This document shows, one piece after another, positions 3,730 to 52,144 of a stretch of DNA of 64,000 nucleotides (position 1 is the stretch's first letter; each line of letters starts with the position of its first letter). The notes below the pieces were generated by a model. That model worked only from the letters and a program-made list of their open reading frames with translations, made no database searches and was not told the origin of the DNA. The position numbers were made by a program, and so were the translations under genes. The DNA lies in IMG/VR virus record IMGVR_UViG_3300025930_000007, positions 202,491 through 266,490 of that record, one strand, 5' to 3'.

Positions 3730-3758
3730 GGTTTACCGGTTTACCGCCGATTTGTCAA
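3730..3758 (-). promoter_or_regulatory. sigma70-like promoter with GTAWACCGGTAWA operator
   Basis: TTGACA-17-TAAACC; spacer ends GGTAAACCGG. Confidence 0.65.
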
Positions 3759-3976
3759 GCGTTGCCGTAATGGTCGCGGAATTCTTTGATGAACCCGCGG
3801 AGGGTGAGGAGCCAAGGCTTCTCGATTGCATCGATCTGAGGATTCTTGATCCTGTCCGCGGCAGCCGCTTCATCGAGGAAGCGGTTGACCTTTACGACTT
3901 CCGGCTTAGACAGCTCGACAAAGTAGCCGTTCTCGCCGTCGCCGTCTTCCCATTTCACGCTGTAGATCTTTTTCAT
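3755..3976 (-). CDS. hypothetical protein
   Basis: ORF in chain. Confidence 0.6.
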   Translation of the reverse strand: MKKIYSVKWEDGDGENGYFVELSKPEVVKVNRFLDEAAAADRIKNPQIDAIEKPWLLTLRGFIKEFRDHYGNA

Positions 3977-3990
3977 ACCGTCCAGTCCGT

Positions 3991-4386
3991 TCAGAGCGAT
4001 TCTTCGTCAACGAATTTCAGCCAGCGATCTGGTTCGAGGATCATGATATCCGCGCCGTCCGGATAGTTGTTGGGAATGATCCAGCCGTCGAAACCGGATA
4101 CTCGTATCAGATCGACGAGCTCTTCCGTGCCACGGGCTTCCATCCCCGCCTCTTCCGCAAGATCATCGAAATCTCTCTTGGATTCAATCAAGGCCAGATT
4201 GGGTATTTCGTACTGCACCTCAAACCTAAGGATTCGTTTATGCTTCCCTTCGTGCCAGGTCGTGAAGTACGTAGCCACGCTTCTGGTATCGCTGAAGAAT
4301 GCTGGGCCCCTCGGGATCCGGAAGCCTTTTGAGGACGTCCCATGGTAGAGATCGGTCCCAACGGGAAGACTTCTGCCTTCAGCCAT
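3991..4386 (-). CDS. ADP-ribosyltransferase-fold protein (ART-PolyVal-like)
   Basis: LYHGTS...AFFS...A..F and GFDGWI motifs. Confidence 0.6.
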   Translation of the reverse strand: MAEGRSLPVGTDLYHGTSSKGFRIPRGPAFFSDTRSVATYFTTWHEGKHKRILRFEVQYEIPNLALIESKRDFDDLAEEAGMEARGTEELVDLIRVSGFDGWIIPNNYPDGADIMILEPDRWLKFVDEESL

Positions 4387-4387
4387 T

Positions 4388-4636
4388 TCAAGACCTGTCG
4401 AAGGGCAACTGGATCTTCGGGAAACTGCTGGAGCTGCCTTCACTCGAGTCCGTCATGATGACTTCGGCGCCCTTTACAAGCAAGCATCCGTCTTTCAGAC
4501 AACGATTGAAGATATCGAATTCTGCCTGACTGAACATCAAGCTTCCGCACATGCTCATGTGGCTCGTCTCATGGCCCATAAAGAGGCGGACATGGACGTG
4601 CTTGTCCCGGACCTCGTATTTCATCTTGATGATCAT
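4388..4636 (-). CDS. hypothetical protein
   Basis: ORF abutting neighbours. Confidence 0.55.
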   Translation of the reverse strand: MIIKMKYEVRDKHVHVRLFMGHETSHMSMCGSLMFSQAEFDIFNRCLKDGCLLVKGAEVIMTDSSEGSSSSFPKIQLPFDRS

Positions 4637-5023
4637 CTACTGCGATTCGACGATATCTTCGAACCGGAGGGGGCCGAACGCCTTATCCCAGGCTGCGGCC
4701 GCCCAGCGCATGCCGTCGACCTTTTCGCGCGGTGCATCCTTGTGCCTGAAATGCTGCCGCATCGACCAGTAATCCTCGCCCTCGATCTCGATGGAGAAAT
4801 AGCCGGCTCGTTTCAGTTGCAGGGCCTGCTCGTAGGAGGCGTTGAAGGTGACGTAGAAGCCGTCCGGATGGCCTTCGCACGAATAGTGGGTGGGAAGCCC
4901 CAACTGGTCAAGCATGAGGACGAAGTAGTTCACGCCTGGATCGAGAAGTTCGCCGCCGCGATAGATCTTGATCGCTGCAGCTTCGTCCCAGACGTTCTTC
5001 TTTGTATATATGCCTTTTCGCAT
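4637..5023 (-). CDS. hypothetical protein with T..SCEGH motif
   Basis: LDPG...L..LG..T.YSCEGH phage-type motif. Confidence 0.7.
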   Translation of the reverse strand: MRKGIYTKKNVWDEAAAIKIYRGGELLDPGVNYFVLMLDQLGLPTHYSCEGHPDGFYVTFNASYEQALQLKRAGYFSIEIEGEDYWSMRQHFRHKDAPREKVDGMRWAAAAWDKAFGPLRFEDIVESQ

Positions 5024-5029
5024 AGAAGA

Positions 5030-5089
5030 GACCGTCTGGGGGGTGTGACGGCTCAGAGTGATTCTATTCGGCCATCATCCCCAAAGCAA
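5030..5089 (-). promoter_or_regulatory. promoter + C-rich-loop leader hairpin
   Basis: TTGCTT-17-TAGAAT then GCCGTC-ACACCCCCCA-GACGGT. Confidence 0.6.
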
Positions 5090-5091
5090 GC

Positions 5092-5149
5092 TGGCTTTCA
5101 GGATTCGGACAGGATAGACTTTCAGTGGCCTTCCGTCCCCCGGCAGGCC
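5092..5149 (+). promoter_or_regulatory. promoter + C-rich-loop leader hairpin
   Basis: TAGACT (5115-5120) then GGCCTTCCG-TCCCC-CGGCAGGCC. Confidence 0.6.
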
Positions 5150-5184
5150 TTATCCGGCCGTCTTCCGCCCTGATCGGTTGCTCC

Positions 5185-6060: not shown

Positions 6061-6365
6061 CGCTTCATGATCCGGTCGAGAAGTTCCTTCTTCTCAGGCA
6101 TGTTCATCAGGATCCAGGCGTAGACTGCCTTCCCCATGGCGTTGTCCCATTCCGGGATTTCCGAGAAAGGAAAATCTCCAGTTCCCGTCTCGGAGAATTC
6201 TTTGGCGATCCTGTCCCAAAATGCGCGTTCGGCGACTTCAATCGCGCGACTCATGCGCTCCCGGAAGGCTTCTGCACGCAGACGCAGATCTCGCTCCTGG
6301 GGCGTCTCAGGATGCCCGTTCGTGAGAGGCATTCCTGCTGCGAAAGCGTCATATCCTGAAGCCAT
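6057..6365 (-). CDS. hypothetical protein
   Basis: AFW..IA..F.E..TGDF motif; convergent 4-nt overlap. Confidence 0.7.
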   Translation of the reverse strand: MASGYDAFAAGMPLTNGHPETPQERDLRLRAEAFRERMSRAIEVAERAFWDRIAKEFSETGTGDFPFSEIPEWDNAMGKAVYAWILMNMPEKKELLDRIMKR

Positions 6366-6367
6366 AA

Positions 6368-6517: not shown

Positions 6518-6535
6518 GTTCTGTTCCTCGTTTTC

Positions 6536-7318: not shown

Positions 7319-7343
7319 CTCCTAAGCCAGAAACTAGCGATGG

Positions 7344-7391: not shown

Positions 7392-7408
7392 CGACAGAAG
7401 ATTCCGAA

Positions 7409-9836: not shown

Positions 9837-10373
9837 TCAGGTAACGAGCTGCTTCATCTTGAGGTAGAGCCGTTCCATCTTCCCCCTGAGGGCGGCCAGA
9901 TGGTCTCCAATGGGAATCTCAAACCAGCTCTGCATCGGGCTCGATGCATCACCATAGAAGACATTCTCGATGATCTCGACATTCTCTTCTTCGTTCATGA
10001 GGAACACCATCGGCGCATCTTTTCTCGGCTTAGCCCTGAAGGTGCAGCCCGAGATCGTCAGATTCCCCTCGGCGACCAGCGTGATCCCTTCCGGAAAGAA
10101 GATCGCCTCGTTGACGATATGGGTACCGCTTTTGACATAGACAGTGCCTCCCGCTTCGGGAAGGGCGTCAATTGCTTGCTGGATGCTCATTCCTGGCTGA
10201 ACGACGATGAACCCTGGAGACTGTACCGGGATGGTTGGGGCGATGGCCGTGCCGAAGCTGGCTGGGCATGGACTTGTCACCGGATAAGCTTGCTCGGCGA
10301 AGAGAGCATTGGGCGCTACTGCTGCAACGGCCGCGGTACCGCCCAGGAACTTCAGAAAGTCTCTTCTGTTCAT
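9837..10373 (-). CDS. Tat-signal protein with short beta-helix (pectin-lyase-like) N-cap
   Basis: MNRRDFLKFLGG; SIQQAIDALPEAGGTVYVKSGTH. Confidence 0.7.
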   Translation of the reverse strand: MNRRDFLKFLGGTAAVAAVAPNALFAEQAYPVTSPCPASFGTAIAPTIPVQSPGFIVVQPGMSIQQAIDALPEAGGTVYVKSGTHIVNEAIFFPEGITLVAEGNLTISGCTFRAKPRKDAPMVFLMNEEENVEIIENVFYGDASSPMQSWFEIPIGDHLAALRGKMERLYLKMKQLVT

Positions 10374-10436
10374 GTCTCCCTCAGTTCTGAAAGATTGTAT
10401 CCGGGATACCGGTATATTTCACCAGCTTCTCGAGGC

Positions 10437-15621: not shown

Positions 15622-16047
15622 CTAAAGTTCCTGCTCCATGACTCGGCGCGACTTCAGGATCGCGGCCGTCTCGAAGATGAAGGGAGCGTGAGGGATGACG
15701 GCGATCCACTCGCCTTCAGGGCCCCCGAACGTCGGATGAAAGACTTCCACGAAGACGCCCTGCGCCTTCGGCTGCCCGATGGCGATGACCAGGCGAACCC
15801 GCTGCTTCGCGGCATAGAGGATGGAGGCGAGGAAGACGCTGATGCAGTCCGAATCGCCAGGGCCGCCCTTCTGGAGGCCATCCGGCGTCCCGGCAGAGCC
15901 TGGATTCTTCCGGGCCCAGTCAGCGAGCTTCTCGAGCATCGGCCGATACTCCATCTCCTCCTTCACGGTGGCTTTTGCCTTCTGCGGAACCATGTTTCCG
16001 CACATCTCGGGGGGAACTCCAGGGGGAAGGCGATCCATGATTCCCAT
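15622..16047 (-). CDS. degenerate transglutaminase-like protein
   Basis: GDSDC.S..LAS.L.....RLV....VFVEV....W (GDCDD/H motif altered). Confidence 0.45.
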   Translation of the reverse strand: MGIMDRLPPGVPPEMCGNMVPQKAKATVKEEMEYRPMLEKLADWARKNPGSAGTPDGLQKGGPGDSDCISVFLASILYAAKQRVRLVIAIGQPKAQGVFVEVFHPTFGGPEGEWIAVIPHAPFIFETAAILKSRRVMEQEL

Positions 16048-16056
16048 AGCTCTCTC

Positions 16057-17094
16057 CTATTCTTGTTCCACTTGGAAGGTGGTCTTACCCTTGGGCTTGA
16101 GTCTTTCCCAGATCACTTCGTCATAAGGCATCTTATCGAGCATCAGGAACATAATGGGCGCGAGGTCTCCATGCTTCTTGAACTCCATCGCCCAGTCCTT
16201 CCTGGTCGATTGAGGAGGCGTGGCCGCAAAGGCAGCCTTCGCCTTCTCCTCGATCTCGCTGTAGGACTTCTTGAGGCCGTCCCGCTGCTTCCGAAACCAT
16301 TCCATGAACTCGTCTGGAACGTTCTCGAAGGACGGCTCGTTGTTCGTAGAAAGGGTCTCCCAGATGCCCTTCACAGAGAGGCCCGTCAGGATCTTATGGA
16401 GCAGCATATACTGGTGGTACTTCAGCTTGACCCGGAGACCGTTGGAATAGCGCGCGACGTACCCTTCCCGATCGCGCACCTTGGGATCCTGGAGCGAGAT
16501 CTCCGAGATCGGCCTAGTTTCGAACCCGATCGCCTTGAAGCCGTAATCCTTCGCGTAAGCCGACACCTGGGCGTAACTCGCGTCTTCCCCGGAGTCCGTC
16601 TTGACGATTCCCAGAAGGATCATCTCCTCCTTTTCATATGGGATCACGAGCCTGTTCCACGGCGCGATGAACTCGAACATGTAGGTGTTGTCGCGGTGCA
16701 ATCGCCTGTGACTCTGGGAGAGCCACGCATTGGCGTACTTGGTCTGGGGATTCTCCCAGCAGCCCCGGGTGATCGCCCGCCAGCCGGTCTCCTCATCATG
16801 GAAGACGATGATCATGCTCCCGTCCACCTTATCGCTGAGCTCGGGAGTCTCGGCGGGAAGTGCCTCGAGCTTCGTCTCAGGGCGCTCATTCACGTTGAAG
16901 AACTTCCGCCAGGGCCGCGCGACGATCTTGCCCTGGTCGTCGAGGACCAGGCCGCGGGCCTGCATCGTGTACTCATCCCAGGCGCGTTCGAACATGCAGT
17001 GGTTCGTATAGTCAAAGATCGTGAGCCGGCCGTTCGGCCGTGCTGCGACGAGGCCCAGATCCACGCGTTTGCGGAGTTCTTCTAAGAGCATCAC
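16057..17094 (-). CDS. rnlA: T4 Rnl1-family RNA ligase
   Basis: ARGLV, KFFN, KVDGS motif I, FEF..PWNRLV, EGYV..RVKLK. Confidence 0.9.
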   Translation of the reverse strand: MMLLEELRKRVDLGLVAARPNGRLTIFDYTNHCMFERAWDEYTMQARGLVLDDQGKIVARPWRKFFNVNERPETKLEALPAETPELSDKVDGSMIIVFHDEETGWRAITRGCWENPQTKYANAWLSQSHRRLHRDNTYMFEFIAPWNRLVIPYEKEEMILLGIVKTDSGEDASYAQVSAYAKDYGFKAIGFETRPISEISLQDPKVRDREGYVARYSNGLRVKLKYHQYMLLHKILTGLSVKGIWETLSTNNEPSFENVPDEFMEWFRKQRDGLKKSYSEIEEKAKAAFAATPPQSTRKDWAMEFKKHGDLAPIMFLMLDKMPYDEVIWERLKPKGKTTFQVEQE

Positions 17095-17486
17095 TTTGCC
17101 TTGGCCTCTTTCTGCTCGCTCAGGGCCGCGTTGCAGATCACCTTGGGAACGTCTTCCAGCTTCTTGGCCCAGCCGAGAGGCTTATCCACGGTGTACTTCT
17201 TCTCGTCCCTTTCTCCATCATGGGTAACCCAGACGACGCGACGGAGATGGTAGCCCTCCGTATCGGCGTTCAGAAGCCAGCGGGCTTCGTACTTCTCCCG
17301 AACATAATCCCAGACCTTCATCGCATCGTCGATCTGAGTCGAGTAGTGGGGAAGATCTTCTCCACGCTCGCCAGCCTCCCCGACCGCGACCCCGCGATAG
17401 GTATTCGGATCCTTCACGACCTTCTGACCAAAGATCTCCTCGGAGATCTTCCGATCCAGACGCAGGGCCTGTTCTTCGCTAAGCAC
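17091..17486 (-). CDS. phage ABA-sandwich domain protein
   Basis: LD..I.E.IFG, P.YST.I.DA..V, P..IC.AAL. Confidence 0.7.
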   Translation of the reverse strand: MLSEEQALRLDRKISEEIFGQKVVKDPNTYRGVAVGEAGERGEDLPHYSTQIDDAMKVWDYVREKYEARWLLNADTEGYHLRRVVWVTHDGERDEKKYTVDKPLGWAKKLEDVPKVICNAALSEQKEAKAK

Positions 17487-17820
17487 CGAAGTTCTCTCCG
17501 CCGGCGGCGACGATCGCTTCCTGTAGTTCCTGGAGGGCGGCGCATTCCGGAGCGCCGTTCACGCTCGGGAAGATCGTCATCCGGAGCTTCATGAAGGCCT
17601 CGACCGCCTCGAGCAGGCGGGCACTGCCTGCGATGCACTGCATGTCCGGATGCTCGCGGTCGGCGTCGACCATAAGACCTTCCGGTCCGCGCTGCCCCAG
17701 CTTGTGCTTCGGCCGGGGCATGAGAACGACAGGCCGGTGGCCATGGGCGCCCACCAGCGTGGAATCGTTCATCCAGACCCAGGGAGCCTTGGTCCGAACT
17801 ACCCGCTTCGTTTCGCTCAC
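17479..17820 (-). CDS. hypothetical protein
   Basis: T.APW...IA...LLEA phage-type motif. Confidence 0.65.
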   Translation of the reverse strand: MSETKRVVRTKAPWVWMNDSTLVGAHGHRPVVLMPRPKHKLGQRGPEGLMVDADREHPDMQCIAGSARLLEAVEAFMKLRMTIFPSVNGAPECAALQELQEAIVAAGGENFGA

Positions 17821-18026
17821 AGTTTCCTCCTCCTGATTTCCATCTCTATCCGCTCCATGCGAATGTAGTTATCGTCCATGATCGCTTCCAAAGGCCGAGT
17901 GTCCGCACCGCACTTCAGACACACATGGTAGTCTTGCCAGTAGGCGCGTTCTCCCGGATAGCGCTCATCGAGCGTCCGCTTCTCCCACTGATGGCCCATG
18001 AAAAGACACTTCAGCCAAGCGATCAT
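17817..18026 (-). CDS. small Zn-ribbon protein
   Basis: KCLFMGHQW...CLKCG. Confidence 0.6.
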   Translation of the reverse strand: MIAWLKCLFMGHQWEKRTLDERYPGERAYWQDYHVCLKCGADTRPLEAIMDDNYIRMERIEMEIRRRKL

Positions 18027-18688
18027 TCTTCTTCGATCTTCAGAAACTTTTCACGAAACCATTCCCGATTCTCGCTGAATACCGGGGCCGTCTGAGCCTC
18101 CCCACGAACGACGACCGTGCCGCGAATCAATTTCTCCGGAAAGGATTGCAACGGCTTATCAGCCAATTCCAGCATGGCGATCATCAGATCCGAATTCTTG
18201 CCATGGAGCTGCTTTGGGCTGAAGACGGACTGCGCCGCCGAGGAGATCGCGTTCCGGCGGCAATCCTGCTGTCTCCAGATGAAGTAATTGATGATGTCGC
18301 GCTCCGGAATGGAACAAACCCGGCCGTCGAAATAGCCTGGAGAACCCCACCGCAGGCTGAATTCAGCACCCATGATTGAAGCCGATACGGAAGATATCTT
18401 CTGGACTACTCCGTCGAACCACTGCATGCTTTCGAACTTGTTGTAGTCGATGAAGAGTAGTGAGATTTCATCGGATTGCATGTAAGCCATGCGCGCCGGG
18501 ACCTCGTCCAGAAGAGCGATGACGGCGTCCTTCATGGCCGTGTTCAGCTTGACGTCGAAGGGCTTCTCGCACTTCCTAGTCAGGGTATGGAAGGCCTTCC
18601 CGTCCAGCCGGATCACTGCTGGCGTCCGGATCAGAAGCCTCTGCCGGAAGACTTCCTCGTACGCCTTCATCCGCTCGCCGAGGTCCAT
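18023..18688 (-). CDS. thg1: tRNA(His) guanylyltransferase Thg1-like protein (3'-5' polymerase)
   Basis: RMK.YE, IRLDGKAFH, QSDEISL, FDGR, YFIWRQQDC.RN. Confidence 0.92.
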   Translation of the reverse strand: MDLGERMKAYEEVFRQRLLIRTPAVIRLDGKAFHTLTRKCEKPFDVKLNTAMKDAVIALLDEVPARMAYMQSDEISLLFIDYNKFESMQWFDGVVQKISSVSASIMGAEFSLRWGSPGYFDGRVCSIPERDIINYFIWRQQDCRRNAISSAAQSVFSPKQLHGKNSDLMIAMLELADKPLQSFPEKLIRGTVVVRGEAQTAPVFSENREWFREKFLKIEEE

Positions 18689-18690
18689 GG

Positions 18691-18972
18691 CTATTCCCTA
18701 TCGCAGTTATGGCAAAGAAGCCCTGCATGGCTCACTTTATACAGGGGCGTCGTTACGTCCGAATCCTGGCGGCCGCAGAGTGAGCAGATCCGCGGAACTG
18801 AGGACAGATACTCTCCAGCCTCCTCGATCTTGATGGCTCGCTCCATCTGGGCGAGCTCCTTGCGGCGCTCGGTACGTCCGCAGGAATGACCGTCCTCACA
18901 GTCACATTCCACGCGCTCGATCCACCACCGCATCCATTCCGCGCCCTTCTTGGCCGCTTCGAGAAGCGTCAT
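18691..18972 (-). CDS. hypothetical Zn-finger protein
   Basis: ATGA overlap; CxxC pairs. Confidence 0.55.
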   Translation of the reverse strand: MTLLEAAKKGAEWMRWWIERVECDCEDGHSCGRTERRKELAQMERAIKIEEAGEYLSSVPRICSLCGRQDSDVTTPLYKVSHAGLLCHNCDRE

Positions 18973-19595
18973 ACCGCCTTCGTCTCCTTGCCCAAGAAGA
19001 GGCTGCAGGTCTTCTCGAACATGTCCTTGTTCGTGAAGAAGAACAGCTTGTTGCTGAGGTCCAACCAGCCCTGGACCCTTTTGCTCCATCCCTCCTTGGA
19101 ATCCTTTGGCTCAAGAAGAGCAGTCCGAAACATGGGGGCTTCCTTGAACCGACGATACTGTTCCTGGCTGATCAGCGACCGGATGAATTTCGTGGCCGGC
19201 GCATGGTGATCGGTCTTCGCAAGGAGATAGACGGGTTTCTTGACGCCCTTGACCGGCCTCTTGAAATGTCGCTCTTCCCATTTCTCGAAGGTCACATCCC
19301 CCATATCGATCTCGAAGTTCGAGGTCGAGAGATCGGCGAGTGAAATGACCATCGACTGAAGGGTCCTGGGAATCTCGCCGAACTCGAATTCTGCAGAACC
19401 CATGTAGTCGAACGTGAAGATCTCCTGAAGGAGATCCATGGCCTCCTTCGACAAGCCTCCGTCTCGGAAGCCGCAGCCGAACGCGAAGATGCGGGCACCG
19501 AGATCCCGGGCATCTTCCCAGGGCTTGTTGAGGCGCTGGATCAGCCAGGGCTCACGCCACTCGCCGATGGGACCTGCCTTTTCGCCGTAGCCCAT
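18969..19595 (-). CDS. hypothetical protein with DYMGSAEFEFG motif
   Basis: AGGAG RBS; conserved-looking phage motif. Confidence 0.75.
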   Translation of the reverse strand: MGYGEKAGPIGEWREPWLIQRLNKPWEDARDLGARIFAFGCGFRDGGLSKEAMDLLQEIFTFDYMGSAEFEFGEIPRTLQSMVISLADLSTSNFEIDMGDVTFEKWEERHFKRPVKGVKKPVYLLAKTDHHAPATKFIRSLISQEQYRRFKEAPMFRTALLEPKDSKEGWSKRVQGWLDLSNKLFFFTNKDMFEKTCSLFLGKETKAV

Positions 19596-19624
19596 ACCGA
19601 TGGAATCTCCTTCCTACCGGAACT

Positions 19625-19654
19625 AGGTATACCGGTATACCTCTCGAATTGCAA
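19625..19654 (-). promoter_or_regulatory. sigma70-like promoter overlapped by perfect 18-bp palindrome
   Basis: TTGCAA-17-TATACC; AGGTATACCGGTATACCT at 19625-19642. Confidence 0.7.
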
Positions 19655-19672
19655 TTGAAATCGGAGGGAGAT

Positions 19673-20491
19673 TTAGACGCCGAGTCTCCGCTTGAGGAAC
19701 TGGCGGTACTCTTTCTGAAGTGGGTCCAGATCAACGATATTCTTGAGAAGAATATCCTCGACAAGCTGCGGATGTTTCTTGAGAAGAAAGCTGACGATCG
19801 CCCAGGACGCCGCGTAGTACTGGGGCCATTTCATCCCGTAAAGGTCATCCCTAGTCGTCCTGATGACCTCGCTTATAGGGATATTGACTATTTCTTCTCC
19901 TCGCATTGCCGCATTCCAGTTCTTTCCTGTCGGCTTGAATCCTTTGTTGGTCCATTCGAGCCGGCTGAAATATTCAGCCATGCCCTCGGCGAACCAGACA
20001 GGATCGAGCACCCCATAGACGCGATGCATATAGGCATGGGTGAATTCATGAGCGTAGGTCTGTTCGAAGTCTTCCGCGTTTGCGGCCATCGAAAAATGAA
20101 CGACCAATTCGCCCTTGACTGGATCGTAGAATGAAAAAGCGTTGCCGGCTCCGCAGCGCCGTGCATAGGCGCAAAACTGAGCTCCATCTCTGAAGATCTT
20201 GATGGTGTAGATGTGCCGGCGGGGAGGCCCCCCGATTTCCCTCTGCAGCATCTCCTCGAGCTTCTCGGCCGTCACCGCAAGCGTCTTGAGCGCTTCGTCC
20301 GGAACGTCTCCCATGACCACCATGGTATCGGTGGCGATCTTTCGCCATTCCGGGTTGTCCATGGGGTAAAGGGCGTACCCGGAACTTCCTTCGTCGACGA
20401 TCTGCTGTGGAAGGCCGCTCAGCCTCGAGGGGATGCCCCAGATATGGAAACCGCCAGGAAGGATGATGAAATCCTGCTCTGTTTTGGGCAT
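19673..20491 (-). CDS. DUF1570-like zinc metallopeptidase
   Basis: AHEFTH (HExxH) + PVWFAEGMAEY. Confidence 0.75.
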   Translation of the reverse strand: MPKTEQDFIILPGGFHIWGIPSRLSGLPQQIVDEGSSGYALYPMDNPEWRKIATDTMVVMGDVPDEALKTLAVTAEKLEEMLQREIGGPPRRHIYTIKIFRDGAQFCAYARRCGAGNAFSFYDPVKGELVVHFSMAANAEDFEQTYAHEFTHAYMHRVYGVLDPVWFAEGMAEYFSRLEWTNKGFKPTGKNWNAAMRGEEIVNIPISEVIRTTRDDLYGMKWPQYYAASWAIVSFLLKKHPQLVEDILLKNIVDLDPLQKEYRQFLKRRLGV

Positions 20492-20504
20492 GCCAACCCG
20501 CGTC

Positions 20505-20783
20505 CTATACTCCGAGCGCTCTTAGCTGCGCGAGAGCGGAATTAAGGCAGCCTCTTACCCTCATCTGGCTGAACATTCCAGGGATCGTCAAGTAGTGCTC
20601 GCAGGCCGTAAGCGTGTCCTGGAGCTGCTTGGGTGCTCCCTCTGGAATACTGGACGCCCGAGCCTGATAGTCGGCGAGCTCAGGCATGTAGTCCTCGGGA
20701 TTCATTCCCTGGCCTTGACCGAGGAAGGGTGGCATGACCAGCCGGACCTGTCCGAGAAATGCTCTTCGATCCATCATAGACAA
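20505..20783 (-). CDS. orphan protein with tandem FLGQ motifs
   Basis: GGAGG RBS; AFLGQVR..PFLGQGQ. Confidence 0.7.
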   Translation of the reverse strand: MSMMDRRAFLGQVRLVMPPFLGQGQGMNPEDYMPELADYQARASSIPEGAPKQLQDTLTACEHYLTIPGMFSQMRVRGCLNSALAQLRALGV

Positions 20784-20799
20784 GCCTCCAAAGAGGCAT

Positions 20800-20863
20800 G
20801 TCCCTTTGGGGGAGGGAGGGACCGCCTATCTTGGACTATAACATCCTTGCATCCCCAGATCAA
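20800..20863 (-). promoter_or_regulatory. promoter + C-rich-loop leader hairpin
   Basis: TTGATC-17-TATAGT then GTCCCT-CCCTCCCCCAA-AGGGAC. Confidence 0.65.
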
Positions 20864-20869
20864 AAGACA

Positions 20870-21565
20870 TTACTTCTTGACCGGCTCGATCAGATAGGCC
20901 ACGGCATTGAAATCGCGGGCGAGCGAAGCCGCCACGATCTCCTGTCGGTCAGACGGGATGCCATCCACCTGGATGACCGTATCGAGTTCCATGCGGACAT
21001 TGTTATAGAACAGGGATCCACCATCGGAAATCTTGCCTTCGAACGCCTTGAACAGAGAGACCTTGATCGTGACTTTCTCCATTTTGACCGGCTTGAACTC
21101 CCAAGGGCTGACGATCCGCCCATGATCCGGACCGAGCACTTGCTTCATCCTGGTCCGAAGATCCTGCTCGTTGATCTTGAAGTCGGCCATCACCTGAAAG
21201 GCGATTCCCTCCCGTTCCTTAAACAGGCCCAGGAGTAGATGCTCCGTCCCGATCACGTCCACGCCGGCACGGCAGGTTTCCTCTTCCGTGAGCTGCAAGA
21301 CTTTCTTCGCCCGCGGGGACCAAGGGAGCTGTCCGAGCGTGCGGGTGGGCTCGGTACCCGGGGAGATCTTGGTATCGATCGCCTTCATCATGACCTCCCG
21401 GTCCACGCCGAGCAGCTTGAGCGTCTTTGCAGCAACTCCCCCGTTTTCATCGAGGATGCCTAACAGCATGTGCTCGGTACCGATGAAGTCCTGATTCAGA
21501 CGCTGAGCGTGCTGACGGGCAAGCGACATGACCTTCCGGGCCCGCTCAGTGAACTTTTCGAACAC
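20870..21565 (-). CDS. stand-alone ClpC N-terminal (Clp repeat) domain protein
   Basis: MFEKFTERARKVMSLA...IGTEHMLLGI and second GTEHLLLGL; no AAA+ module. Confidence 0.88.
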   Translation of the reverse strand: MFEKFTERARKVMSLARQHAQRLNQDFIGTEHMLLGILDENGGVAAKTLKLLGVDREVMMKAIDTKISPGTEPTRTLGQLPWSPRAKKVLQLTEEETCRAGVDVIGTEHLLLGLFKEREGIAFQVMADFKINEQDLRTRMKQVLGPDHGRIVSPWEFKPVKMEKVTIKVSLFKAFEGKISDGGSLFYNNVRMELDTVIQVDGIPSDRQEIVAASLARDFNAVAYLIEPVKK

Positions 21566-21788
21566 GCTTGATCTCCTTCCAATATGGATACGAACACCAG
21601 AAAACCGCCCACCAGGCCGCCAAGATCACGAGAACCTCCATAGCGGCGATCGGCACAAAGAGCCCAGGCGACTGATACCTTGAGCTGATTGCCCCGGCAT
21701 TGAGCCAGACCAGCATCTTGATCAACGGAATGCTGTAGAAGAGCCATGCTCCTATCACTGCCAGAGCCGTGACCTTCGCCGCCTTCAT
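21546..21788 (-). CDS. membrane protein
   Basis: two TM segments. Confidence 0.6.
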   Translation of the reverse strand: MKAAKVTALAVIGAWLFYSIPLIKMLVWLNAGAISSRYQSPGLFVPIAAMEVLVILAAWWAVFWCSYPYWKEIKRVRKVH

Positions 21789-21789
21789 G

Positions 21790-22230
21790 CTACTTACGAG
21801 GGAGAGGAGTCGTATTCATCTTCTCCGGACCGGCCTCCTGCATCACCTCGAGGAAAGGGTATTCCTTTCCCGAGAAGGCATATCCCATCAGAATATTGGG
21901 TAGCGACTGGTTGAGCGAATAGCTGAAGCCCTGCAGGCGGATGAACTCTTGGACTCCCTCCTTCTTGAAGCGCACGATCTTGGTGTTGATCACCACGGCG
22001 CCGGAAGGAATGCTGACCTGGTGCGGGATCGTGCTGAGATTCACGACTTCCACGAAGGGATTCGTAAAGTACCATCCCGGGTTGTCCTGAATGTCGACCT
22101 TCCCGTTCATGGAGTTGTAGGCCACGCCGATCTCGTTGATGTGGACGTGGTTCCAGCACAGGATATAGAACAGCAACAGGAAGACCGGCGGGACCGCCAC
22201 CGAGATCGCGATCTTCACCCATTTATGCAT
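21790..22230 (-). CDS. truncated SPFH/band-7-like membrane protein
   Basis: TM then V..NEIGV.YN...G...PGWY...PF. Confidence 0.6.
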   Translation of the reverse strand: MHKWVKIAISVAVPPVFLLLFYILCWNHVHINEIGVAYNSMNGKVDIQDNPGWYFTNPFVEVVNLSTIPHQVSIPSGAVVINTKIVRFKKEGVQEFIRLQGFSYSLNQSLPNILMGYAFSGKEYPFLEVMQEAGPEKMNTTPLPRK

Positions 22231-22765
22231 TTTTCGTTTCCTCAGGGGGTAGGACGAGTTTCATCTCACGATTGGGCGGAACGATGGGAGTCAAATGAAC
22301 TTGCGGTGGTACGGTCCTAGGATCCACTGACGAGTTCATCACCATCATATAAGACCCGGAATATCCAGTCGACCAGTACGAACTGGACATCATCAGTTTC
22401 TGGCCATTCAGGAAGTATTCCGGACGCCCACTGGAATCCGGGATCATCTTATGGTCATGCTTCTGGATCCGGTTGTCCCACCTCATTCCACAGAGAGCGC
22501 ACGTCTCAAAATACGCAAATTCTTCAGCGCAACCCTTACAGGAATGCCAAGTCTTGATGCCGTGCTTGCAGCGAACGGCGGCATCGTTGGCCTTCTGGGA
22601 AGACTTATTGTCCTGAATCTCCTTGATCCAGCCGGCGACCTGGGCGACGAGGATAACGCCTGCCCAGGCAAGCGAGGAGACCGGCTTGATGCCCCGATTC
22701 CAGTCGACCATCATGGCCACCAGCATCACTGGAATCGCTGCATACCAGAACACCAAGTATTTCAT
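22223..22765 (-). CDS. membrane protein with Cys/His motifs
   Basis: two TM, CKHG..C..C. Confidence 0.6.
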   Translation of the reverse strand: MKYLVFWYAAIPVMLVAMMVDWNRGIKPVSSLAWAGVILVAQVAGWIKEIQDNKSSQKANDAAVRCKHGIKTWHSCKGCAEEFAYFETCALCGMRWDNRIQKHDHKMIPDSSGRPEYFLNGQKLMMSSSYWSTGYSGSYMMVMNSSVDPRTVPPQVHLTPIVPPNREMKLVLPPEETKNA

Positions 22766-23772
22766 CCCTTGACCTCGTTCAATACGATTGCCTGACGCAT
22801 CCAGTGCCCATGGGTTTGGACGTGGTTCTTCCTAACGTATTTCGCAACAACATCCTTAAATTCCTTGTACTGGAAGGCCCGTGCGACGCGAACGACGTAA
22901 CCTTCGCAGGGATCTCCGTTGTATAGGTCGATCTCGATGGCCTTCGTCCAACTCTCGTCCCAGAGACCACGATGGAACACGGGCACCGTCTTCAGATCCA
23001 GGAGCGCGCACCAGCTCTCCGTCTCCTCCCAGGAGAGGCATTCGTTCTTCTCGTTCCAGATCGAGAAGACCAGGAAGTGCGCCGGCAGATTCAGGTAATG
23101 GATCGAATGCTTGGCGTAGAGGTTCTCGCCGCAGATCCTCCAACCAGGCGGAATATCATGTCCGATCCGGCGATGCAGGCCCCAGAGCCAGTCCCTGGAG
23201 GGATGCGGCGCCGTGTCGATCGAGCGGGCATGGAAACCATCCGGGTACATGGATGTCTGCTCCCCGTCCATCTTGATCGTGATCACGACCGCCTGGCCCT
23301 CCAGGCCGTGGAGCGATGGGATGATCTTGTCGTCGCTTGAGACGTTCGGGCTCCAGGGAAGGTGATGGGTCCGCTGGTATTTCACCCGATCCGTGAAGAG
23401 GTGCAGGACCGGCTTCAGGATCTTCTGGACGCTCTCGTCATGGAAGAGTTCGCCCTTCAGACGCTGGCCGTTCGGGAGGATCGGATTGCCCCACTTGTCC
23501 ACCGGCTGGTCCGAGTAGAAGTGAGGGGGCAGGAGAACCTCCTGGATCCCGCAGCGCTCCCGGAGCTCGTCGCACGAAAGCTCCGTGGACTCTGCCAGGA
23601 GATGATGGACCTCGCAGACGGAGGCCCCATTCGAGACGTAGTATCCCCCATCGGGCCACAGTCGGCGTTCGATGATGTGGTGAGCATCCTTCGCCGGCTG
23701 CCCGCAGACAACGCATTCCCAGCCGTCTCGCTTGAAGACGGCATTCCTGAACTCGTCTCTACTTAGCAACAT
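22762..23772 (-). CDS. HNH domain + ATP-dependent RNA ligase fusion
   Basis: VFKRDG..CVVC..AHHI..NG..VC..HH; KY.RT.HLPWS, KMDGE, CGEN, EGYVVR, KYVR. Confidence 0.88.
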   Translation of the reverse strand: MLLSRDEFRNAVFKRDGWECVVCGQPAKDAHHIIERRLWPDGGYYVSNGASVCEVHHLLAESTELSCDELRERCGIQEVLLPPHFYSDQPVDKWGNPILPNGQRLKGELFHDESVQKILKPVLHLFTDRVKYQRTHHLPWSPNVSSDDKIIPSLHGLEGQAVVITIKMDGEQTSMYPDGFHARSIDTAPHPSRDWLWGLHRRIGHDIPPGWRICGENLYAKHSIHYLNLPAHFLVFSIWNEKNECLSWEETESWCALLDLKTVPVFHRGLWDESWTKAIEIDLYNGDPCEGYVVRVARAFQYKEFKDVVAKYVRKNHVQTHGHWMRQAIVLNEVKG

Positions 23773-24307
23773 CTCTCACCGGCCAGACCTTGTACTCGGG
23801 ATGAGCCTTCTTGAAGGCCTCCGCACACGGAAGGCAGGGAAAATCCCAGAAGCCGTACTTCAGATCGCCACGACCGAACGTGACCGTCTCGTCATCGATC
23901 GACGTCGACGCGCTGCAATCCGCGCGGCCGCAGGCTTGCTTGGGCTTGGCTTTTTCTTCCATGACGTGCGTCCAGTTCATGTCGATGAATTCTTTCGGGA
24001 AGTAGGACGGGAAACAGACTGTCGACCGTCCATTCACAATCACCTTGACCGAATCATGTCCTTCTCGAAGCTTCAGGATCTCGTAGTCGATGTCGGTCCC
24101 GGCTTTCTTTTCGTCCTCGATCAGCTTCATCAGGTATTCGCGGCCCTCGCGCCAGGTCTTGAGATCCTCGGCCGCCTGGGCTGCCTTCCATCGCATGTAA
24201 TCAGGTGAATTCAGGTATTCGATGGCCAAGCGAGCCCACTCTTTGGTGGAGATCTCGCCTTTCATGCCCTTGGCGAAGCTTTCCGCGAATTCCTTCTTAC
24301 TGATCAT
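23759..24307 (-). CDS. hypothetical protein
   Basis: ST.ID..TFG.G.L..GFW..PC motif. Confidence 0.65.
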   Translation of the reverse strand: MISKKEFAESFAKGMKGEISTKEWARLAIEYLNSPDYMRWKAAQAAEDLKTWREGREYLMKLIEDEKKAGTDIDYEILKLREGHDSVKVIVNGRSTVCFPSYFPKEFIDMNWTHVMEEKAKPKQACGRADCSASTSIDDETVTFGRGDLKYGFWDFPCLPCAEAFKKAHPEYKVWPVRDVAK

Positions 24308-25596: not shown

Positions 25597-25625
25597 ATGG
25601 TATTCTTGGTTTACCTCTTAGTCAA
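25597..25625 (-). promoter_or_regulatory. sigma70-like promoter with GGTAAACC half-site
   Basis: TTGACT-17-TACCAT. Confidence 0.55.
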
Positions 25626-26014: not shown

Positions 26015-27187
26015 ATGCCTTACGTTTTAGCCGACGGGAGAGGCCAGAAGATCGGGCTCTATACCACCTGCCTGGATATCTCGTATGCCCAGGCCGAACT
26101 CCTTCTCATGGTCGAGAAGGCGAAACTCGATCATCCTGACGCGTTCATCGTAGGCTACGCAGATTCTCAGCTCCAGATCTCCGTCGAACGCTTCCTTGAG
26201 CCTCACAAGCAGTATCCCAAGGAACTGGAGAGAATCGAGGAACTCCGGTCCAAGATCAAGGCCAAGGGAATGCATTCCTTCACCGTCCGTCATTTCGACG
26301 ATGACTGGGAAACGTTCCTGAAGTCGAAGCCTCTCCTCCAGATCGGCCGCTGCATCGACAGCGTGGTCAATCAGATGGTGGATTTCAAGGCCAAGGGCAA
26401 AGACGAAGAAGTCGCCGAAATGGTCGAAGACATTTTCGCCAATCCCTTGCATGCCGGCATCCATCAGGACTTCCCACCTACCGTCTCCGACGAAATCTGG
26501 ATTGCGGATGCCGCCAAATCCATCCGCAGGATCACTCCGGAGAAGTGGCTGAGAAGACTCCTGCATGTTATGCGCTTCTATTTCAAAGGAAAGCCGAAGA
26601 TCGCCCTTCCCCATAAGAATGACCGCTGTCCTTGCGGCAGCAGCAAGAAATACGGCAAGTGCTGTGGTTACGGCGTCGAGCACGAGGACCCGGAAAACTG
26701 CAAACTCGGGATGCATCAGTTCACGATGTGGGAAGAAGTCGATGGCAAGTTCATCCGAACCTGCGAGAAGTGCTTCAGGGTCTACGAAGCTCCATGGTTT
26801 GAGGAAGTCGATTATGATGGAGTAGACATCCTGGTCATTGGCTGCCGGGCCTGCGCTGAAAAACCGACTGACGAAGACTTCGCTCGGGAAATGGAGGAAG
26901 CCCAGAAATGGCATATCTGCGGCTCATGCATGAAGCCATTCGGGCTAAGGCATATCATCCTCGAGCACACCTGGTCCGATGGAAAGCACATCGGCCATTG
27001 GAAAGGGACTGAGATCGATACCAAAGAGGAAGCCGTCGATCTTCAGTCGATCGGACTAGGAAAGGGAGTGTTCCTTCACAAGGAATGCTTCATGAAGGCA
27101 ATTCCAGGCTGGCCCAAATCGGCCAAGCCATCCGGCAGAGGACCGGCCAAGGAAATCATGCGGGATATTACGCCTACTGCGAGTTGA
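26015..27187 (+). CDS. SEC-C motif-containing multi-Zn protein
   Basis: NDRCPCGSSKKYGKCCG plus further CxxC. Confidence 0.75.
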   Translation: MPYVLADGRGQKIGLYTTCLDISYAQAELLLMVEKAKLDHPDAFIVGYADSQLQISVERFLEPHKQYPKELERIEELRSKIKAKGMHSFTVRHFDDDWETFLKSKPLLQIGRCIDSVVNQMVDFKAKGKDEEVAEMVEDIFANPLHAGIHQDFPPTVSDEIWIADAAKSIRRITPEKWLRRLLHVMRFYFKGKPKIALPHKNDRCPCGSSKKYGKCCGYGVEHEDPENCKLGMHQFTMWEEVDGKFIRTCEKCFRVYEAPWFEEVDYDGVDILVIGCRACAEKPTDEDFAREMEEAQKWHICGSCMKPFGLRHIILEHTWSDGKHIGHWKGTEIDTKEEAVDLQSIGLGKGVFLHKECFMKAIPGWPKSAKPSGRGPAKEIMRDITPTAS

Positions 27188-34294: not shown

Positions 34295-34606
34295 CTAGCG
34301 AAGCCCATCCCGCGGCCGCTGCTGCGTGAGCCGCCATTTTGCCTGCCAGGGCGACGCGATCTCTCGTACCGGAGATTGAAAGACCGGATTTCGAATGGGC
34401 TTCGGCTTCTTTTCCTTGGGTTCCGGAGGAGGAAGAATGACCGTAACCTCTTTTCGAATCGTGATCTGGTAGGTGGCGACGTTGTTGTCCGTGATTTCGG
34501 TATGGCTCATCGGGATGGTGCTATCCGCAGTGAGCGGATGCTGATGGATTTCAACGGTTGGCGAGCAATTGGTGCTCGTGGGTGTGTAATTGAGCTGCAT
34601 GAACAT
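34295..34606 (-). CDS. hypothetical protein
   Basis: ORF abutting ASCH gene. Confidence 0.5.
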   Translation of the reverse strand: MFMQLNYTPTSTNCSPTVEIHQHPLTADSTIPMSHTEITDNNVATYQITIRKEVTVILPPPEPKEKKPKPIRNPVFQSPVREIASPWQAKWRLTQQRPRDGLR

Positions 34607-34652
34607 GTTAAACGAGTTTACTGCTCCTCGTTTTTCATGTCAAGCTATGCGT

Positions 34653-35151: not shown

Positions 35152-35211
35152 CTGGTCGCCGGGGGAAGCGACCGGACAGCCTGATTATACTTTGAGCCCA
35201 GGCGATCTCAA
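35152..35211 (-). promoter_or_regulatory. promoter + C-rich-loop leader hairpin
   Basis: TTGAGA-16-TATAAT then GGTCGC-TTCCCCCG-GCGACC. Confidence 0.7.
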
Positions 35212-35412
35212 CGGGAATTTAGACCAACAGCCACACCAATAAGTACGATGACCGCAGGAATCGAATAGGACATTGAGGTCCCAAGTAATCTTGAAAGTCC
35301 TATTCCACATCAAGCCATAGAGCACCACGCCGTAGGGCTTGTACAAGATCTCGATTCCCCACCATCCAAAACGAAGCTGCAGCCACGGAGCCCATGGAAT
35401 CGTCAGTAGCAT
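35185..35412 (-). CDS. Trp-rich hypothetical protein
   Basis: ORF filling intergenic space. Confidence 0.45.
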   Translation of the reverse strand: MLLTIPWAPWLQLRFGWWGIEILYKPYGVVLYGLMWNRTFKITWDLNVLFDSCGHRTYWCGCWSKFPLRSPGLKV

Positions 35413-35465
35413 GGCTTCACCCGGTTACTGGTATACCGCCGTTTACGAGTCATCGCATTTTCTTC

Positions 35466-48369: not shown

Positions 48370-48386
48370 TTTACACCATCCCGGCG

Positions 48387-50972: not shown

Positions 50973-51484
50973 TGAGTAGCCCTAACCTTCATCTTCTTGG
51001 CGATCGTCCGAAGATCGTCGACGATCGGACTTGTTCCAAGAACATCTGCCAGGAGCAGCGATTCTTCAGCGTAGAGCTTGCAGAAATCCGATGGGGCGTC
51101 GGTCATCTCGAGCAGGTTGTCGATGCGATCGAGCGTCTTGATCAGCTTGACCTCTTCGGGGACCTCAGACAGATGCTTCCGATCCAAGGCCTTACGCTGA
51201 TCCCGAGGAAGTCCCGTGCCCTTGGACTTGTTCGTCATGCAGTCCACGTAGAAGGCGACCTGGGCGTTCGTCGCCTCCTCGATCTCTGCCTTGGTGATCG
51301 TGGTATCTTCCAGCACATCGTGCAGATAGGCCGCGGCCACCATCTCTTCGGTGACTACGGGCAGAATTCCTACCCGACCGGCCACCCGCGCCGGATGCGT
51401 GATGTAGGGGAATCCCGTGTACTTCCGCTTCTGCCCTTCATGTGCCCGGACTGCGAGCGCCGCCGCCTTGAGAATAATGCTCAT
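50969..51484 (-). CDS. Mesh1/SpoT-like HD-domain hydrolase
   Basis: AH.GQKRK...PYITHP, LHDVLEDT, K.LDRIDNL. Confidence 0.85.
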   Translation of the reverse strand: MSIILKAAALAVRAHEGQKRKYTGFPYITHPARVAGRVGILPVVTEEMVAAAYLHDVLEDTTITKAEIEEATNAQVAFYVDCMTNKSKGTGLPRDQRKALDRKHLSEVPEEVKLIKTLDRIDNLLEMTDAPSDFCKLYAEESLLLADVLGTSPIVDDLRTIAKKMKVRATQ

Positions 51485-51864
51485 GAGGTGATCCGTTTCT
51501 CTTTCAATTCCTTCCGTCTTCCGACTTCCTGCTCAATCTGGACGAGGCCTCCCAAGGTCTGCCGGAGCTTGATGCGGAGATCTTCGGCGGCCTTGAGCAG
51601 ATCGCGCTGCCAGACCTCCAGCGTCTCTTCCCGAACCGACTGGATCATCTCCGGCTTCCAGTGCGCGAAATACTCGATCGTCGAGAGTTCCTCGCCCAGG
51701 ATCTTGACGGCCGCGCGCACTCTGAGCGCCGTCGCCATATCTCCTCCCTTCAGCAGCATCAGCCGCTGGATCAAAATGCCCTTGCCGTCGCAGGGCTTGC
51801 AAGGCCCGCTGTTATCCGCCTTCAGGCCCCGCCCGTCGCAGTCTTTGCAGACTTTGTATCCCAC
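51481..51864 (-). CDS. CxxCxGxG Zn-finger protein
   Basis: GAGGAG RBS, GTG start; two CxxCDGxG. Confidence 0.6.
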   Translation of the reverse strand: MGYKVCKDCDGRGLKADNSGPCKPCDGKGILIQRLMLLKGGDMATALRVRAAVKILGEELSTIEYFAHWKPEMIQSVREETLEVWQRDLLKAAEDLRIKLRQTLGGLVQIEQEVGRRKELKEKRITS

Positions 51865-52094
51865 TGTTCTCCTCGGACGGCCAGATAGTTTTCCAGGTCC
51901 TGCACGAACGCGCCGGTGCGACCTCTGGGAATCTTTGGACCGGCGAGAGCATCGCCTAGGAGGCTTTCGTGAAATTTCACGGGGTCGATCACATGGGATC
52001 CTGGCGCCAGGTCGAAAGGCTCTGCTGCAGGGCCGATCTGCTTCAGTCGCCTGATCATCTCCTTCACCCGGGGATTCCATTCGGCGCCGGCCAC
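51822..52094 (-). CDS. hypothetical protein
   Basis: AGGAGG RBS. Confidence 0.65.
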   Translation of the reverse strand: MAGAEWNPRVKEMIRRLKQIGPAAEPFDLAPGSHVIDPVKFHESLLGDALAGPKIPRGRTGAFVQDLENYLAVRGEQWDTKSAKTATGGA

Positions 52095-52115
52095 TTATCT
52101 CCTCCTGTCGACGCC

Positions 52116-52144
52116 GTTATACCGGTTTACGGGTCGCCGGTCAA
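52116..52144 (-). promoter_or_regulatory. sigma70-like promoter with GTAWACCGGTAWA operator
   Basis: TTGACC-17-TATAAC; spacer ends GTAAACCGG. Confidence 0.65.

What the first reader, a model, noticed from the sequence alone, without database searches (positions are those of the whole stretch)
3730..52144. Second promoter class with a shared GTAWACCGGTAWA operator
Seen: three minus-strand promoters share the layout TTGnnn-N8-GTAWACCGG-TAWAMC (3730-3758, 19626-19654 with a perfect 18-bp palindrome, 52116-52144). Related sites lie at ~10405-10417, 25608-25615 and ~35423-35437. They head blocks of small early-type ORFs and none is followed by a C-loop hairpin. Inference: a repressor- or activator-controlled regulon distinct from the hairpin regulon, giving two expression classes.
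Basis: partly seen in the sequence, partly recalled or inferred. Interest (0 to 1): 0.62.

Follow-up and report, generated by a model that had tools for sequence, protein, structure and literature searches.

The report
GTAAAC box in phage promoter cores
A soil huge phage carries a short conserved DNA box (GTAAAC) inside about twenty of its promoters, and the three sites reported are its double-box members; this is probably a landing site for an unknown regulator, an ordinary kind of phage gene control with a new motif.

Summary
GTAWACCGGTAWA occurs exactly three times in the 236-kb genome, all in this window, against 0.05 expected. All three sites have the layout TTGNNN-N17-TAWAMC and lie about 25 nt before a GGAGAT ribosome site.

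The three sites are not a class of their own. They are the double-box subset of a family of at least 20 promoter-like sites: TTGAC, then N4-8, GTAAAC(C), N2-6, and a TA-hexamer. The strict family pattern gives 12 hits against 0 in ten simulated genomes.

In related phages (56-96% protein identity) the boxes persist at orthologous places while the flanks diverge. The 18-bp palindrome and the CCGG core are not conserved.

The box shifts by 1-3 nt while the -35/-10 spacing stays at 17-18 nt. It occurs in both orientations and as direct or inverted arrays, and it persists where no -35 remains.

The best reading is a binding site for an unidentified regulator, more likely a repressor, embedded in host-type promoter cores. 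No sigma factor, RNA polymerase, MotA/AsiA or common HTH family was detected, and no RNA data exist.

C-loop hairpins never follow these promoters, so two promoter classes are supported. Their timing is untested.

The parts
3730..3758 (-). Double-box promoter, site 1. TTGACA (3758-3753), N8, GTAAACC (3744-3738), G, GTAAACC (3736-3730); the second box holds the -10-like TAAACC. The stop codon of the upstream gene lies inside the -35.
19625..19654 (-). Double-box promoter, site 2. TTGCAA, N7, GGTATACC x2, with -10-like TATACC at 19631-19626 and an 18-bp palindrome at 19642-19625. Orthologs in four relatives read GTAAACC-N1-3-GTATACC.
52116..52144 (-). Double-box promoter, site 3. TTGACC, N8, GTAAACC, G, GTATAAC. 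The 14 nt GTAAACCGGTATAA are identical in the relative, while the 5' spacer and the leader differ.
25597..25625 (-). Single-box promoter: TTGACT, N5, GTAAACC, N5, TACCAT. AGGTAAACCAAGnnTACC is invariant in two relatives, although TTGAC lies 5, 9 or 22 nt away from it.
34607..34643 (-). TTGACA-17-TAAACT. GTAAAC overlaps the -10 and forms an inverted pair with GTTTAAC, directly before the ATG at 34606, so the transcript is probably leaderless. The arrangement is conserved in the relative.
35423..35446 (-). Triple direct array: GTAAAC (35446-35441), GTATACC (35436-35430), GTAACC (35428-35423). It lies 11 nt before a 75-aa ORF (35185-35412) and has no TTG -35. It forms a 28-nt conserved island in the relative.
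10394..10422 (-). GTGAAA-17-TACAAT, with the degenerate palindromic box pair ATATACCGGTATCC (10404-10417) in the spacer. It lies upstream of a Tat-signal protein gene (9837-10373). No ortholog could be aligned.
61440..61457 (-). Weak candidate: GTAAAC-N6-TATTCT without a -35. The box overlaps the stop codon of the upstream gene.
18969..19595 (-). First gene behind site 2 (208 aa, P0002), of unknown function. It was used as the anchor to find relatives.
51822..52094 (-). First gene behind site 3 (90 aa, P0001), with no family hit. It is followed by a 127-aa gene, an HD phosphohydrolase and a C5 methyltransferase.
3343..3675 (-). First called gene behind site 1 (110 aa, Cys-rich). The GGAGAT ribosome site at about 3712 is followed only by a GTG that meets a stop two codons on. 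The next genes are an 87-aa gene and an RlaP-like nucleotidyltransferase.

Best explanation
GTAAAC(C), loosely GGTWWACC, is a short binding module for a sequence-specific DNA-binding protein. The protein is most likely phage-encoded and has not been identified. The module is embedded in the core of at least 20 host-type (TTGAC / 16-18 nt / TA-hexamer) promoters that punctuate the long co-directional gene arrays of this 236-kb soil phage.

A protein bound between -35 and -10, or over the -10, would block RNA polymerase wherever exactly the box sits. I therefore favour a repressor that shuts this promoter class off, or tunes it, as a block.

The three reported sites are the members in which a second box coincides with the -10 hexamer. 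They carry a tandem pair with an 8-bp period and are probably the highest-occupancy sites.

Shown here: the motif, its enrichment, its orientation, its shifting position, its conservation in relatives, and its mutual exclusion with C-loop hairpins.

Inferred: that a protein binds it, that the effect is repression, and that the host sigma70-type polymerase reads these promoters.
For: Enrichment:
- GTAAAC occurs 43 times in the genome, 23 of them in the 8% that is intergenic (P about 2e-14).
- 20 of those 23 point the same way as the downstream gene, by my reading of the site list.
- The strict pattern TTGNNN..GTAWAC..TA-hexamer gives 12 hits against 0 in ten Markov genomes, all in gene sense.
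- 17 of 34 intergenic sigma70-like sites carry the box.

Selection:
- The promoter of the P0002 ortholog in five genomes keeps TTG, GTAAACC and GTATACC while the rest varies.
- The boxes at window 25609, 34616, 35441 and 52125 are kept in a relative of 77-80% identity. The 34616 box differs at one base.
- 0 of 4 GTAAAC hexamers inside coding sequence are kept.

Independent module:
- The box-to--10 gap varies by 1-3 nt between orthologs, with compensating change on the -35 side. The -35/-10 spacing stays at 17-18 nt.
- The gap is 3-6 nt across paralogs.

Typical of a transcription factor rather than a polymerase element:
- Inverted boxes occur in spacers at genome 26938 and 202439.
- Inverted pairs occur at genome 155282 and window 34616.
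- Direct arrays with 8-10-bp period occur at sites 1-3 and window 35423-35446.
- Extra boxes lie outside the core at genome 195324 and 217027.

No phage sigma factor or RNA polymerase was detected.
Against: - No DNA-binding protein could be assigned. HTH_3, HTH_17, GntR, RHH_1, MotA and AsiA gave nothing. The first genes behind the double-box promoters have no family hit.
- There are no expression or transcription-start data.
- The orientation bias (20:3) and the constant closeness to a TA-hexamer would also fit a directional promoter element.
- The box persists where no usable -35 is left (window 35423-35446, L136, L141). This fits an activator or recruitment element better than a pure repressor.
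- The -10 hexamers of the three sites end in C, so a generic sigma70 scan does not call them.
Confidence: 0.5

Rival explanations
1. The box is a positive promoter-recognition element. An unknown phage factor (an activator, a sigma-appropriation system or a very divergent sigma-like protein) reads GTAAAC just upstream of a TA-hexamer and directs host polymerase to a middle-type promoter class. The TTGAC -35 would be dispensable.
For: - The box plus a TA-hexamer is conserved where the -35 is displaced or absent. TTGAC lies 5, 9 or 22 nt away in three orthologs, and the 28-nt island at 35423-35446 has no TTG.
- The sense-orientation bias is strong.
- The box is always 3-6 nt upstream of a TA-hexamer.
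- The -10 hexamers of the double-box sites lack the final T and look weak on their own.
Against: - The box position relative to the -10 shifts by 3-6 nt, and between orthologs by 1-3 nt, which is unusual for an element read by polymerase or a fixed activator.
- Inverted boxes occur in spacers.
- TTGAC at 16-18 nt is present in most members, and its spacing is maintained by compensating indels.
- No sigma, MotA or AsiA homolog was found.
Confidence: 0.28
2. No trans-acting factor is involved. GTAAAC is an intrinsic spacer feature of this phage's strong promoters for the unknown host's housekeeping polymerase, for example through DNA shape or a spacer contact, or it is a relic of promoter cassettes copied around the genome.
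For: - The long form of the family is a fairly rigid cassette of about 45 bp: TTGAC-N5/6-GTAAAC-N5/6-TACCAT or TATACT, then C(C)GTG/A.
- No regulator gene was found.
Against: - Positions between the blocks are not conserved among paralogs, so recent copying is unlikely.
- The box is conserved in orthologs independently of the -35.
- It occurs in both orientations, in arrays and outside the core.
Confidence: 0.12
3. One reading: a three-promoter regulon defined by the 13-bp quasi-palindromic operator GTAWACCGGTAWA, bound by a dimeric regulator.
For: - There are three exact copies against 0.05 expected.
- Site 2 is a perfect 18-bp palindrome.
- All three share the N8 register and a GGAGAT ribosome site.
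Against: - Orthologs of site 2 break both the palindrome and the CCGG junction and change the box spacing (8, 9 or 10-bp period), yet keep both boxes.
- Sites 1 and 3 are direct repeats, not inverted repeats.
- The same box occurs singly in at least 15 other promoters.
Confidence: 0.07

Closest known systems
Mycobacteriophage L5 gp71 operator and stoperator sites
   Same: A short asymmetric site is present in some 20-30 copies across a phage genome. It lies almost only in short intergenic spaces and in one orientation relative to transcription. One copy overlaps a promoter core. This phage also carries a tyrosine integrase.
   Different: Here nearly every copy sits inside a promoter-like core rather than between genes as an elongation block. 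Arrays and inverted pairs occur. No gp71-like or other HTH repressor was detected. Binding is untested.
Phage T4 middle promoters (MotA box plus sigma70 -10, with AsiA)
   Same: A phage-specific box lies upstream of a TAnnnT-type -10 and marks a temporal promoter class read by host polymerase. The box position has some play.
   Different: The MotA box replaces the -35 at about -30. Here the box lies at about -24 to -16 and a TTGAC -35 is usually present. No MotA or AsiA homolog was found.
Operators placed between -35 and -10 (repressors acting by occlusion; MerR-type spacer operators)
   Same: The protein site lies in the promoter spacer or over the -10, so occupancy and polymerase binding exclude each other.
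   Different: MerR-type promoters have 19-20-bp spacers and a fixed dyad. Here the spacers are 16-18 bp and the box position shifts.
Caulobacter-type housekeeping promoters (TTGACGS / GCTANAWC; from my own knowledge: Malakooti et al. 1995)
   Same: The -35 is TTGAC and the -10 hexamer ends in C, as in TATAAC at site 3.
   Different: TAAACC and TATACC do not fit TANAWC. The host is unknown: genome search gave no near relative or prophage.

Membership tests
sigma70-type (-35/-10) bacterial promoter | TTGACA-like -35 hexamer | tested here: met
   TTGACA, TTGCAA and TTGACC at the three sites. TTGAC is present in 11 of the 12 strict family members; site 2 has TTGCAA.
sigma70-type (-35/-10) bacterial promoter | 16-18 nt between the hexamers | tested here: met
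   The spacing is 17 nt at all three sites. It is kept at 17-18 nt in five orthologs through compensating indels.
sigma70-type (-35/-10) bacterial promoter | -10 hexamer TAnnnT (A at position 2, T at position 6) | tested here: not met
   The hexamers are TAAACC, TATACC and TATAAC, all ending in C, so the generic scan does not list them. Single-box members (TACCAT, TATACT) do meet this feature.
sigma70-type (-35/-10) bacterial promoter | Transcription starts 5-9 nt downstream of the -10 | not testable with these tools
   No RNA run was listed for this phage.
L5-type dispersed repressor sites (operator/stoperator) | Many copies of an asymmetric site, intergenic, in one orientation relative to transcription | tested here: met
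   23 of 43 GTAAAC hexamers lie in the 8% of the genome that is intergenic, and 20 of those 23 are in gene sense.
L5-type dispersed repressor sites (operator/stoperator) | Most sites lie outside promoters and block elongation | tested here: not met
   Nearly all boxes lie within a -35/-10-like core.
L5-type dispersed repressor sites (operator/stoperator) | A phage repressor binds the site | not testable with these tools
   No HTH_3, HTH_17, GntR or RHH_1 protein was detected. Binding needs an experiment.
T4 MotA-dependent middle promoter | Box centred at about -30 in place of the -35 | tested here: not met
   The box lies 3-6 nt upstream of the -10, and a TTGAC -35 is usually present.
T4 MotA-dependent middle promoter | MotA and AsiA encoded by the phage | tested here: not met
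   PF09158 and PF09010 gave no match in the genome.
MerR-type spacer operator | Dyad operator in an over-long (19-20 bp) spacer | tested here: not met
   The spacers are 16-18 bp. Only site 2 is a dyad, and that dyad is not conserved.
CRP/NtcA-type site (GTA-N8-TAC) | Fixed N8 between inverted half-sites | tested here: not met
   The site-2 orthologs have N8, N9 or N10, and sites 1 and 3 lack the TAC half.

The most novel reading that the evidence does not exclude
An unrecognised phage protein with no detectable HTH, sigma or MotA-like family binds GTAAAC boxes as monomer-like units in flexible arrays. Through at least 20 promoter cores it switches a large part of a huge phage's non-structural genes at once. 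This would be a genome-wide promoter-embedded switch, and at sites lacking a -35 the box might even substitute for it.
Probability: 0.3. Interest if true: 0.6.

Novelty: new member of a known kind. Interest (0 to 1): 0.4.

Why it matters
Huge phages from soil are known almost only as sequence, and how they time their genes is unknown. This work gives a concrete, conserved cis-element and a list of at least 20 promoters that carry it. It also identifies a second, mutually exclusive promoter class (C-loop hairpins) and a third class behind strong terminators.

That makes the transcription programme of an uncultivated phage clade testable by DNA pull-down, cell-free expression or reporter assays. 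It also supplies a motif for annotating transcription units in related contigs. Promoter-embedded regulatory motifs are a familiar feature of phages, so it does not change how phage regulation is understood.

Tried and rejected
- Near-identity search in the phage collection found no match.
- A pattern scan of viral contigs with the family motif gave 117+ single hits. That is roughly the ~100 I had roughly estimated for chance beforehand, and only the phage's own twin contig was relevant.
- A literature search for the motif returned only primer sequences and unrelated papers.
- No RNA runs were listed.
- SNF2-helicase relatives in viral contigs are unrelated low-GC phages.
- Five of the contig look-ups returned gene tables but no DNA.
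- The genome collection gave only hits of 40% identity or less in MAG bins, so no host could be inferred.
- Pfam searches of the genome were negative or below cut-off for Sigma70_r2 and r4_2, T7-type and multisubunit RNA polymerase, HTH_3, HTH_17, GntR, RHH_1, MotA and AsiA.
- I considered CCGG methylation by the phage C5 methyltransferase as the reason for the motif. I rejected it because orthologs lose CCGG but keep the boxes.
- I considered GTAAAC as an ECF-type -35 paired with a CGT -10. I rejected it because the downstream CCGTG is the start codon of leaderless genes in some members (for example genome 13546 and 48144) and is absent from the double-box sites.
- Rfam found nothing in the window.

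Full report
**Source.** The window is bases 89,091-153,090 of a single 236,090-bp virus record (57.7% G+C; IMG/VR 'linear'; CheckV about 90% complete). It equals metagenome contig Ga0070686_100000008. A 266-kb twin, Ga0207701_10000001, carries identical loci.

About three quarters of the coding sequence is on the minus strand, in long co-directional arrays. The window encodes:
- an SNF2 helicase, a C5 methyltransferase, an ATP-dependent ligase, a PolX-like protein and a kinase-like protein;
- RNA-repair enzymes: an RlaP-type nucleotidyltransferase, a Thg1-like enzyme and an RNA ligase.

Elsewhere the genome has a tyrosine integrase, helicases and a primase. No near relative exists in the phage collection.

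The three sites read exactly as described.
- GTAWACCGGTAWA has three exact copies in the window, against 0.05 expected. There are no other copies in the genome.
- Each site is TTGNNN, 17 nt, then TAAACC, TATACC or TATAAC. A GGAGAT ribosome site follows about 15-25 nt downstream.
- Site 2 is a perfect 18-bp palindrome.
- The related sites at 10404-10417, 25608-25615 and 35423-35446 are also present.

**The three sites belong to a much larger family.** A listing of all intergenic regions and of all GTAWAC hexamers shows the same box in many promoter-like sites. The layout is TTGAC(N), N4-8, GTAAAC(C), N2-6, then TACCAT, TATACT or TAWAMC.

Members lie at these genome positions: 13546, 37383, 44850, 48144, 63013, 72612, 85632, 92829, 108725, 114699, 123706, 124531, 141215, 155282, 160143, 164308, 167130, 185742, 195301, 205812, 217058 and 226739. 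Inverted boxes lie at 26938 and 202439.

The statistics are as follows:
- GTAAAC occurs 43 times, 23 of them in the 8% of the genome that is intergenic (P about 2e-14).
- 20 of those 23 are in the sense of the downstream gene.
- A strict form of the pattern has 12 hits against none in ten Markov-simulated genomes, all in gene sense.
- Of 34 intergenic sigma70-like sites, 17 carry the box.

The three reported sites are the members in which the box lies 1 nt before a second box, and that second box contains the -10-like hexamer.

**Conservation in relatives.** The 208-aa protein behind site 2 (P0002) has a graded series of homologs. Contigs with DNA were obtained for proteins of 96, 82, 72 and 56% identity. 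The promoter upstream reads as follows:

| Genome | Promoter |
|---|---|
| Window | TTGCAA-N8-GTATACC-g-GTATACC |
| L140 | TTGCAT-N8-GTAAACC-gc-GTATACC |
| L137 | TTGAAC-N7-GTAAACC-gtg-GTATACC |
| L136 | TTGAAA-N8-GTAAACC-g-GTATACC |
| L141 | TTGCGT-N6-GTAAACC-atc-GTATACC |

Both boxes and TTG are kept and the rest varies. The palindrome and the CCGG junction are peculiar to the window's lineage. The box shifts by 1-3 nt, while compensating changes hold the -35/-10 distance at 17-18 nt.

I rebuilt 42.9 kb of the 72% relative. It is colinear with window 10,000-53,461 at 77-80% nucleotide identity.
- Every sense intergenic box in that stretch is kept at its orthologous place.
- Site 3 keeps 14 identical bases with diverged flanks.
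- Window 35423-35446 is a 28-nt island between diverged flanks.
- Window 34616 keeps the inverted pair over the -10, although the box hexamer itself differs at one base.
- Window 25609 is conserved.
- None of the four GTAAAC hexamers inside coding sequence is kept.

At the 25609 promoter, AGGTAAACCAAGnnTACC is invariant in three genomes. TTGAC lies 5, 9 or 22 nt upstream of it. The box is therefore selected independently of a usable -35.

**What this suggests.** The box behaves as an independent module:
- Its position shifts between -35 and -10.
- It occurs in both orientations inside spacers.
- It forms direct arrays with 8-10-bp period (sites 1-3; 35423-35446) and inverted pairs (genome 155282; window 34616).
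- It sometimes lies just outside the core (genome 195324, 217027).

These are properties of a transcription-factor site rather than of an element read at a fixed register by polymerase. A factor bound anywhere between -35 and -10 would exclude polymerase, so repression tolerates a shifting position. That is why I favour a repressor.

Several observations point the other way, toward a positive recognition element. These are the sense-orientation bias, the constant closeness to a TA-hexamer, the survival of the box without a -35, and the weak C-ending -10 hexamers of the three sites, which a generic scan misses. I keep that reading as a strong rival.

The genome shows no sigma70 domains, no T7-type or multisubunit polymerase, no MotA or AsiA, and none of four common DNA-binding families. 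The first genes behind the double-box promoters have no family hit. The trans factor is therefore unknown. No RNA run was listed, so starts and timing are untested.

**Relation to the hairpin class.** About 13 intergenic hairpins with C-rich loops exist. None follows a box-bearing promoter, whereas a C5+ run lies within 60 nt after 6 of the 17 box-free sigma70-like sites. Two promoter classes are thus supported. A third class, TTGACA-N3-TATATACTCGGGTC-TATACT, lies behind a strong terminator.

**Comparison with known systems.** In function the system most resembles dispersed asymmetric repressor sites of the mycobacteriophage L5 type, and operators placed in promoter spacers. It is not a member of the MotA-box, MerR or NtcA types, because their defining features were tested and not met (see the membership table).

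**Verdict.** This is a real and conserved regulatory motif of a familiar kind, with a new sequence and an unknown binder.

Noticed in passing
window 58823-58910 (also genome 40484, 181401, 185441): A third promoter type, TTGACA-N3-TATATACTCGGGTC-TATACT, contains a direct repeat of TATACTC. It lies directly behind a strong terminator (16-bp stem plus T-run, 58910-58875) and in front of genes with strong ribosome sites and high codon scores. These may be late or highly expressed genes.
   Followed up: partly
window 5038, 7354, 20808, 28807, 30592, 35161, 42427 (minus strand): Hairpins with C5-C8 loops lie in 5' leaders. There are about 13 in intergenic DNA across the genome. None lies behind a GTAAAC promoter. 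Their function was not studied.
   Followed up: partly
L128:1976-2019 (genome 41976-42019): Two tandem 22-bp units each hold the palindrome CTAACATATATGTTAG. They lie within a larger 26-nt inverted repeat in a 215-bp intergenic region about 5 kb from a tyrosine integrase (L128:7028-8125). The arrangement looks like the operator pair of a lysogeny switch. The neighbouring genes have no Pfam hit.
   Followed up: partly
window 34604-34620; genome 13546, 48144, 63013, 164308: Several box-bearing promoters have the start codon only 6-9 nt after the TA-hexamer, so the transcripts would be leaderless or nearly so.
   Followed up: no
L136:9615-10004: In the 72% relative a 129-aa gene is inserted between the double-box promoter and the P0002 ortholog. 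The promoter stays at the head of the unit. The same 129/130-aa gene is seen in the gene tables of other relatives.
   Followed up: no
window 19658-19664 and orthologs (alignment A2): CGATTTC, 3 nt upstream of the -35 of site 2, is nearly invariant: CGATTTC in four of the five genomes and CGATTAT in L141. It may be an UP-like or second protein site.
   Followed up: no
window 18969-19595 (P0002): This 208-aa protein of unknown function, with the invariant motif F.FDYMG.AEFEFG, has homologs in many phage contigs of 160-480 kb and in contigs of 0.9 Mb binned as candidate-phyla bacteria (also in bins labelled as small archaea).
   Followed up: partly
window 15622-24000: This stretch is a dense RNA-repair cluster: a T4 Rnl1-like ligase, a Thg1-like enzyme, a second RNA ligase (PF09414, seen in the relative's gene table), a Clp_N-domain protein and a Phage_ABA_S-like protein. 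An RlaP-type nucleotidyltransferase lies at 2349-3074. The cluster suggests defence against host tRNA-cleaving systems.
   Followed up: no
window 9837-10373: The gene behind the degenerate box pair at 10404-10417 encodes a protein with a twin-arginine (Tat) signal, which is unusual for a phage early-region gene.
   Followed up: no
L134:17073-19457 (genome 230073-232457): A 794-aa protein has an N-terminal HTH (phrog_3855; weak Sigma70_r4_2, E 0.008). It is the only HTH-like signal found in the genome and may be a D5-like primase/helicase or an origin binder.
   Followed up: no
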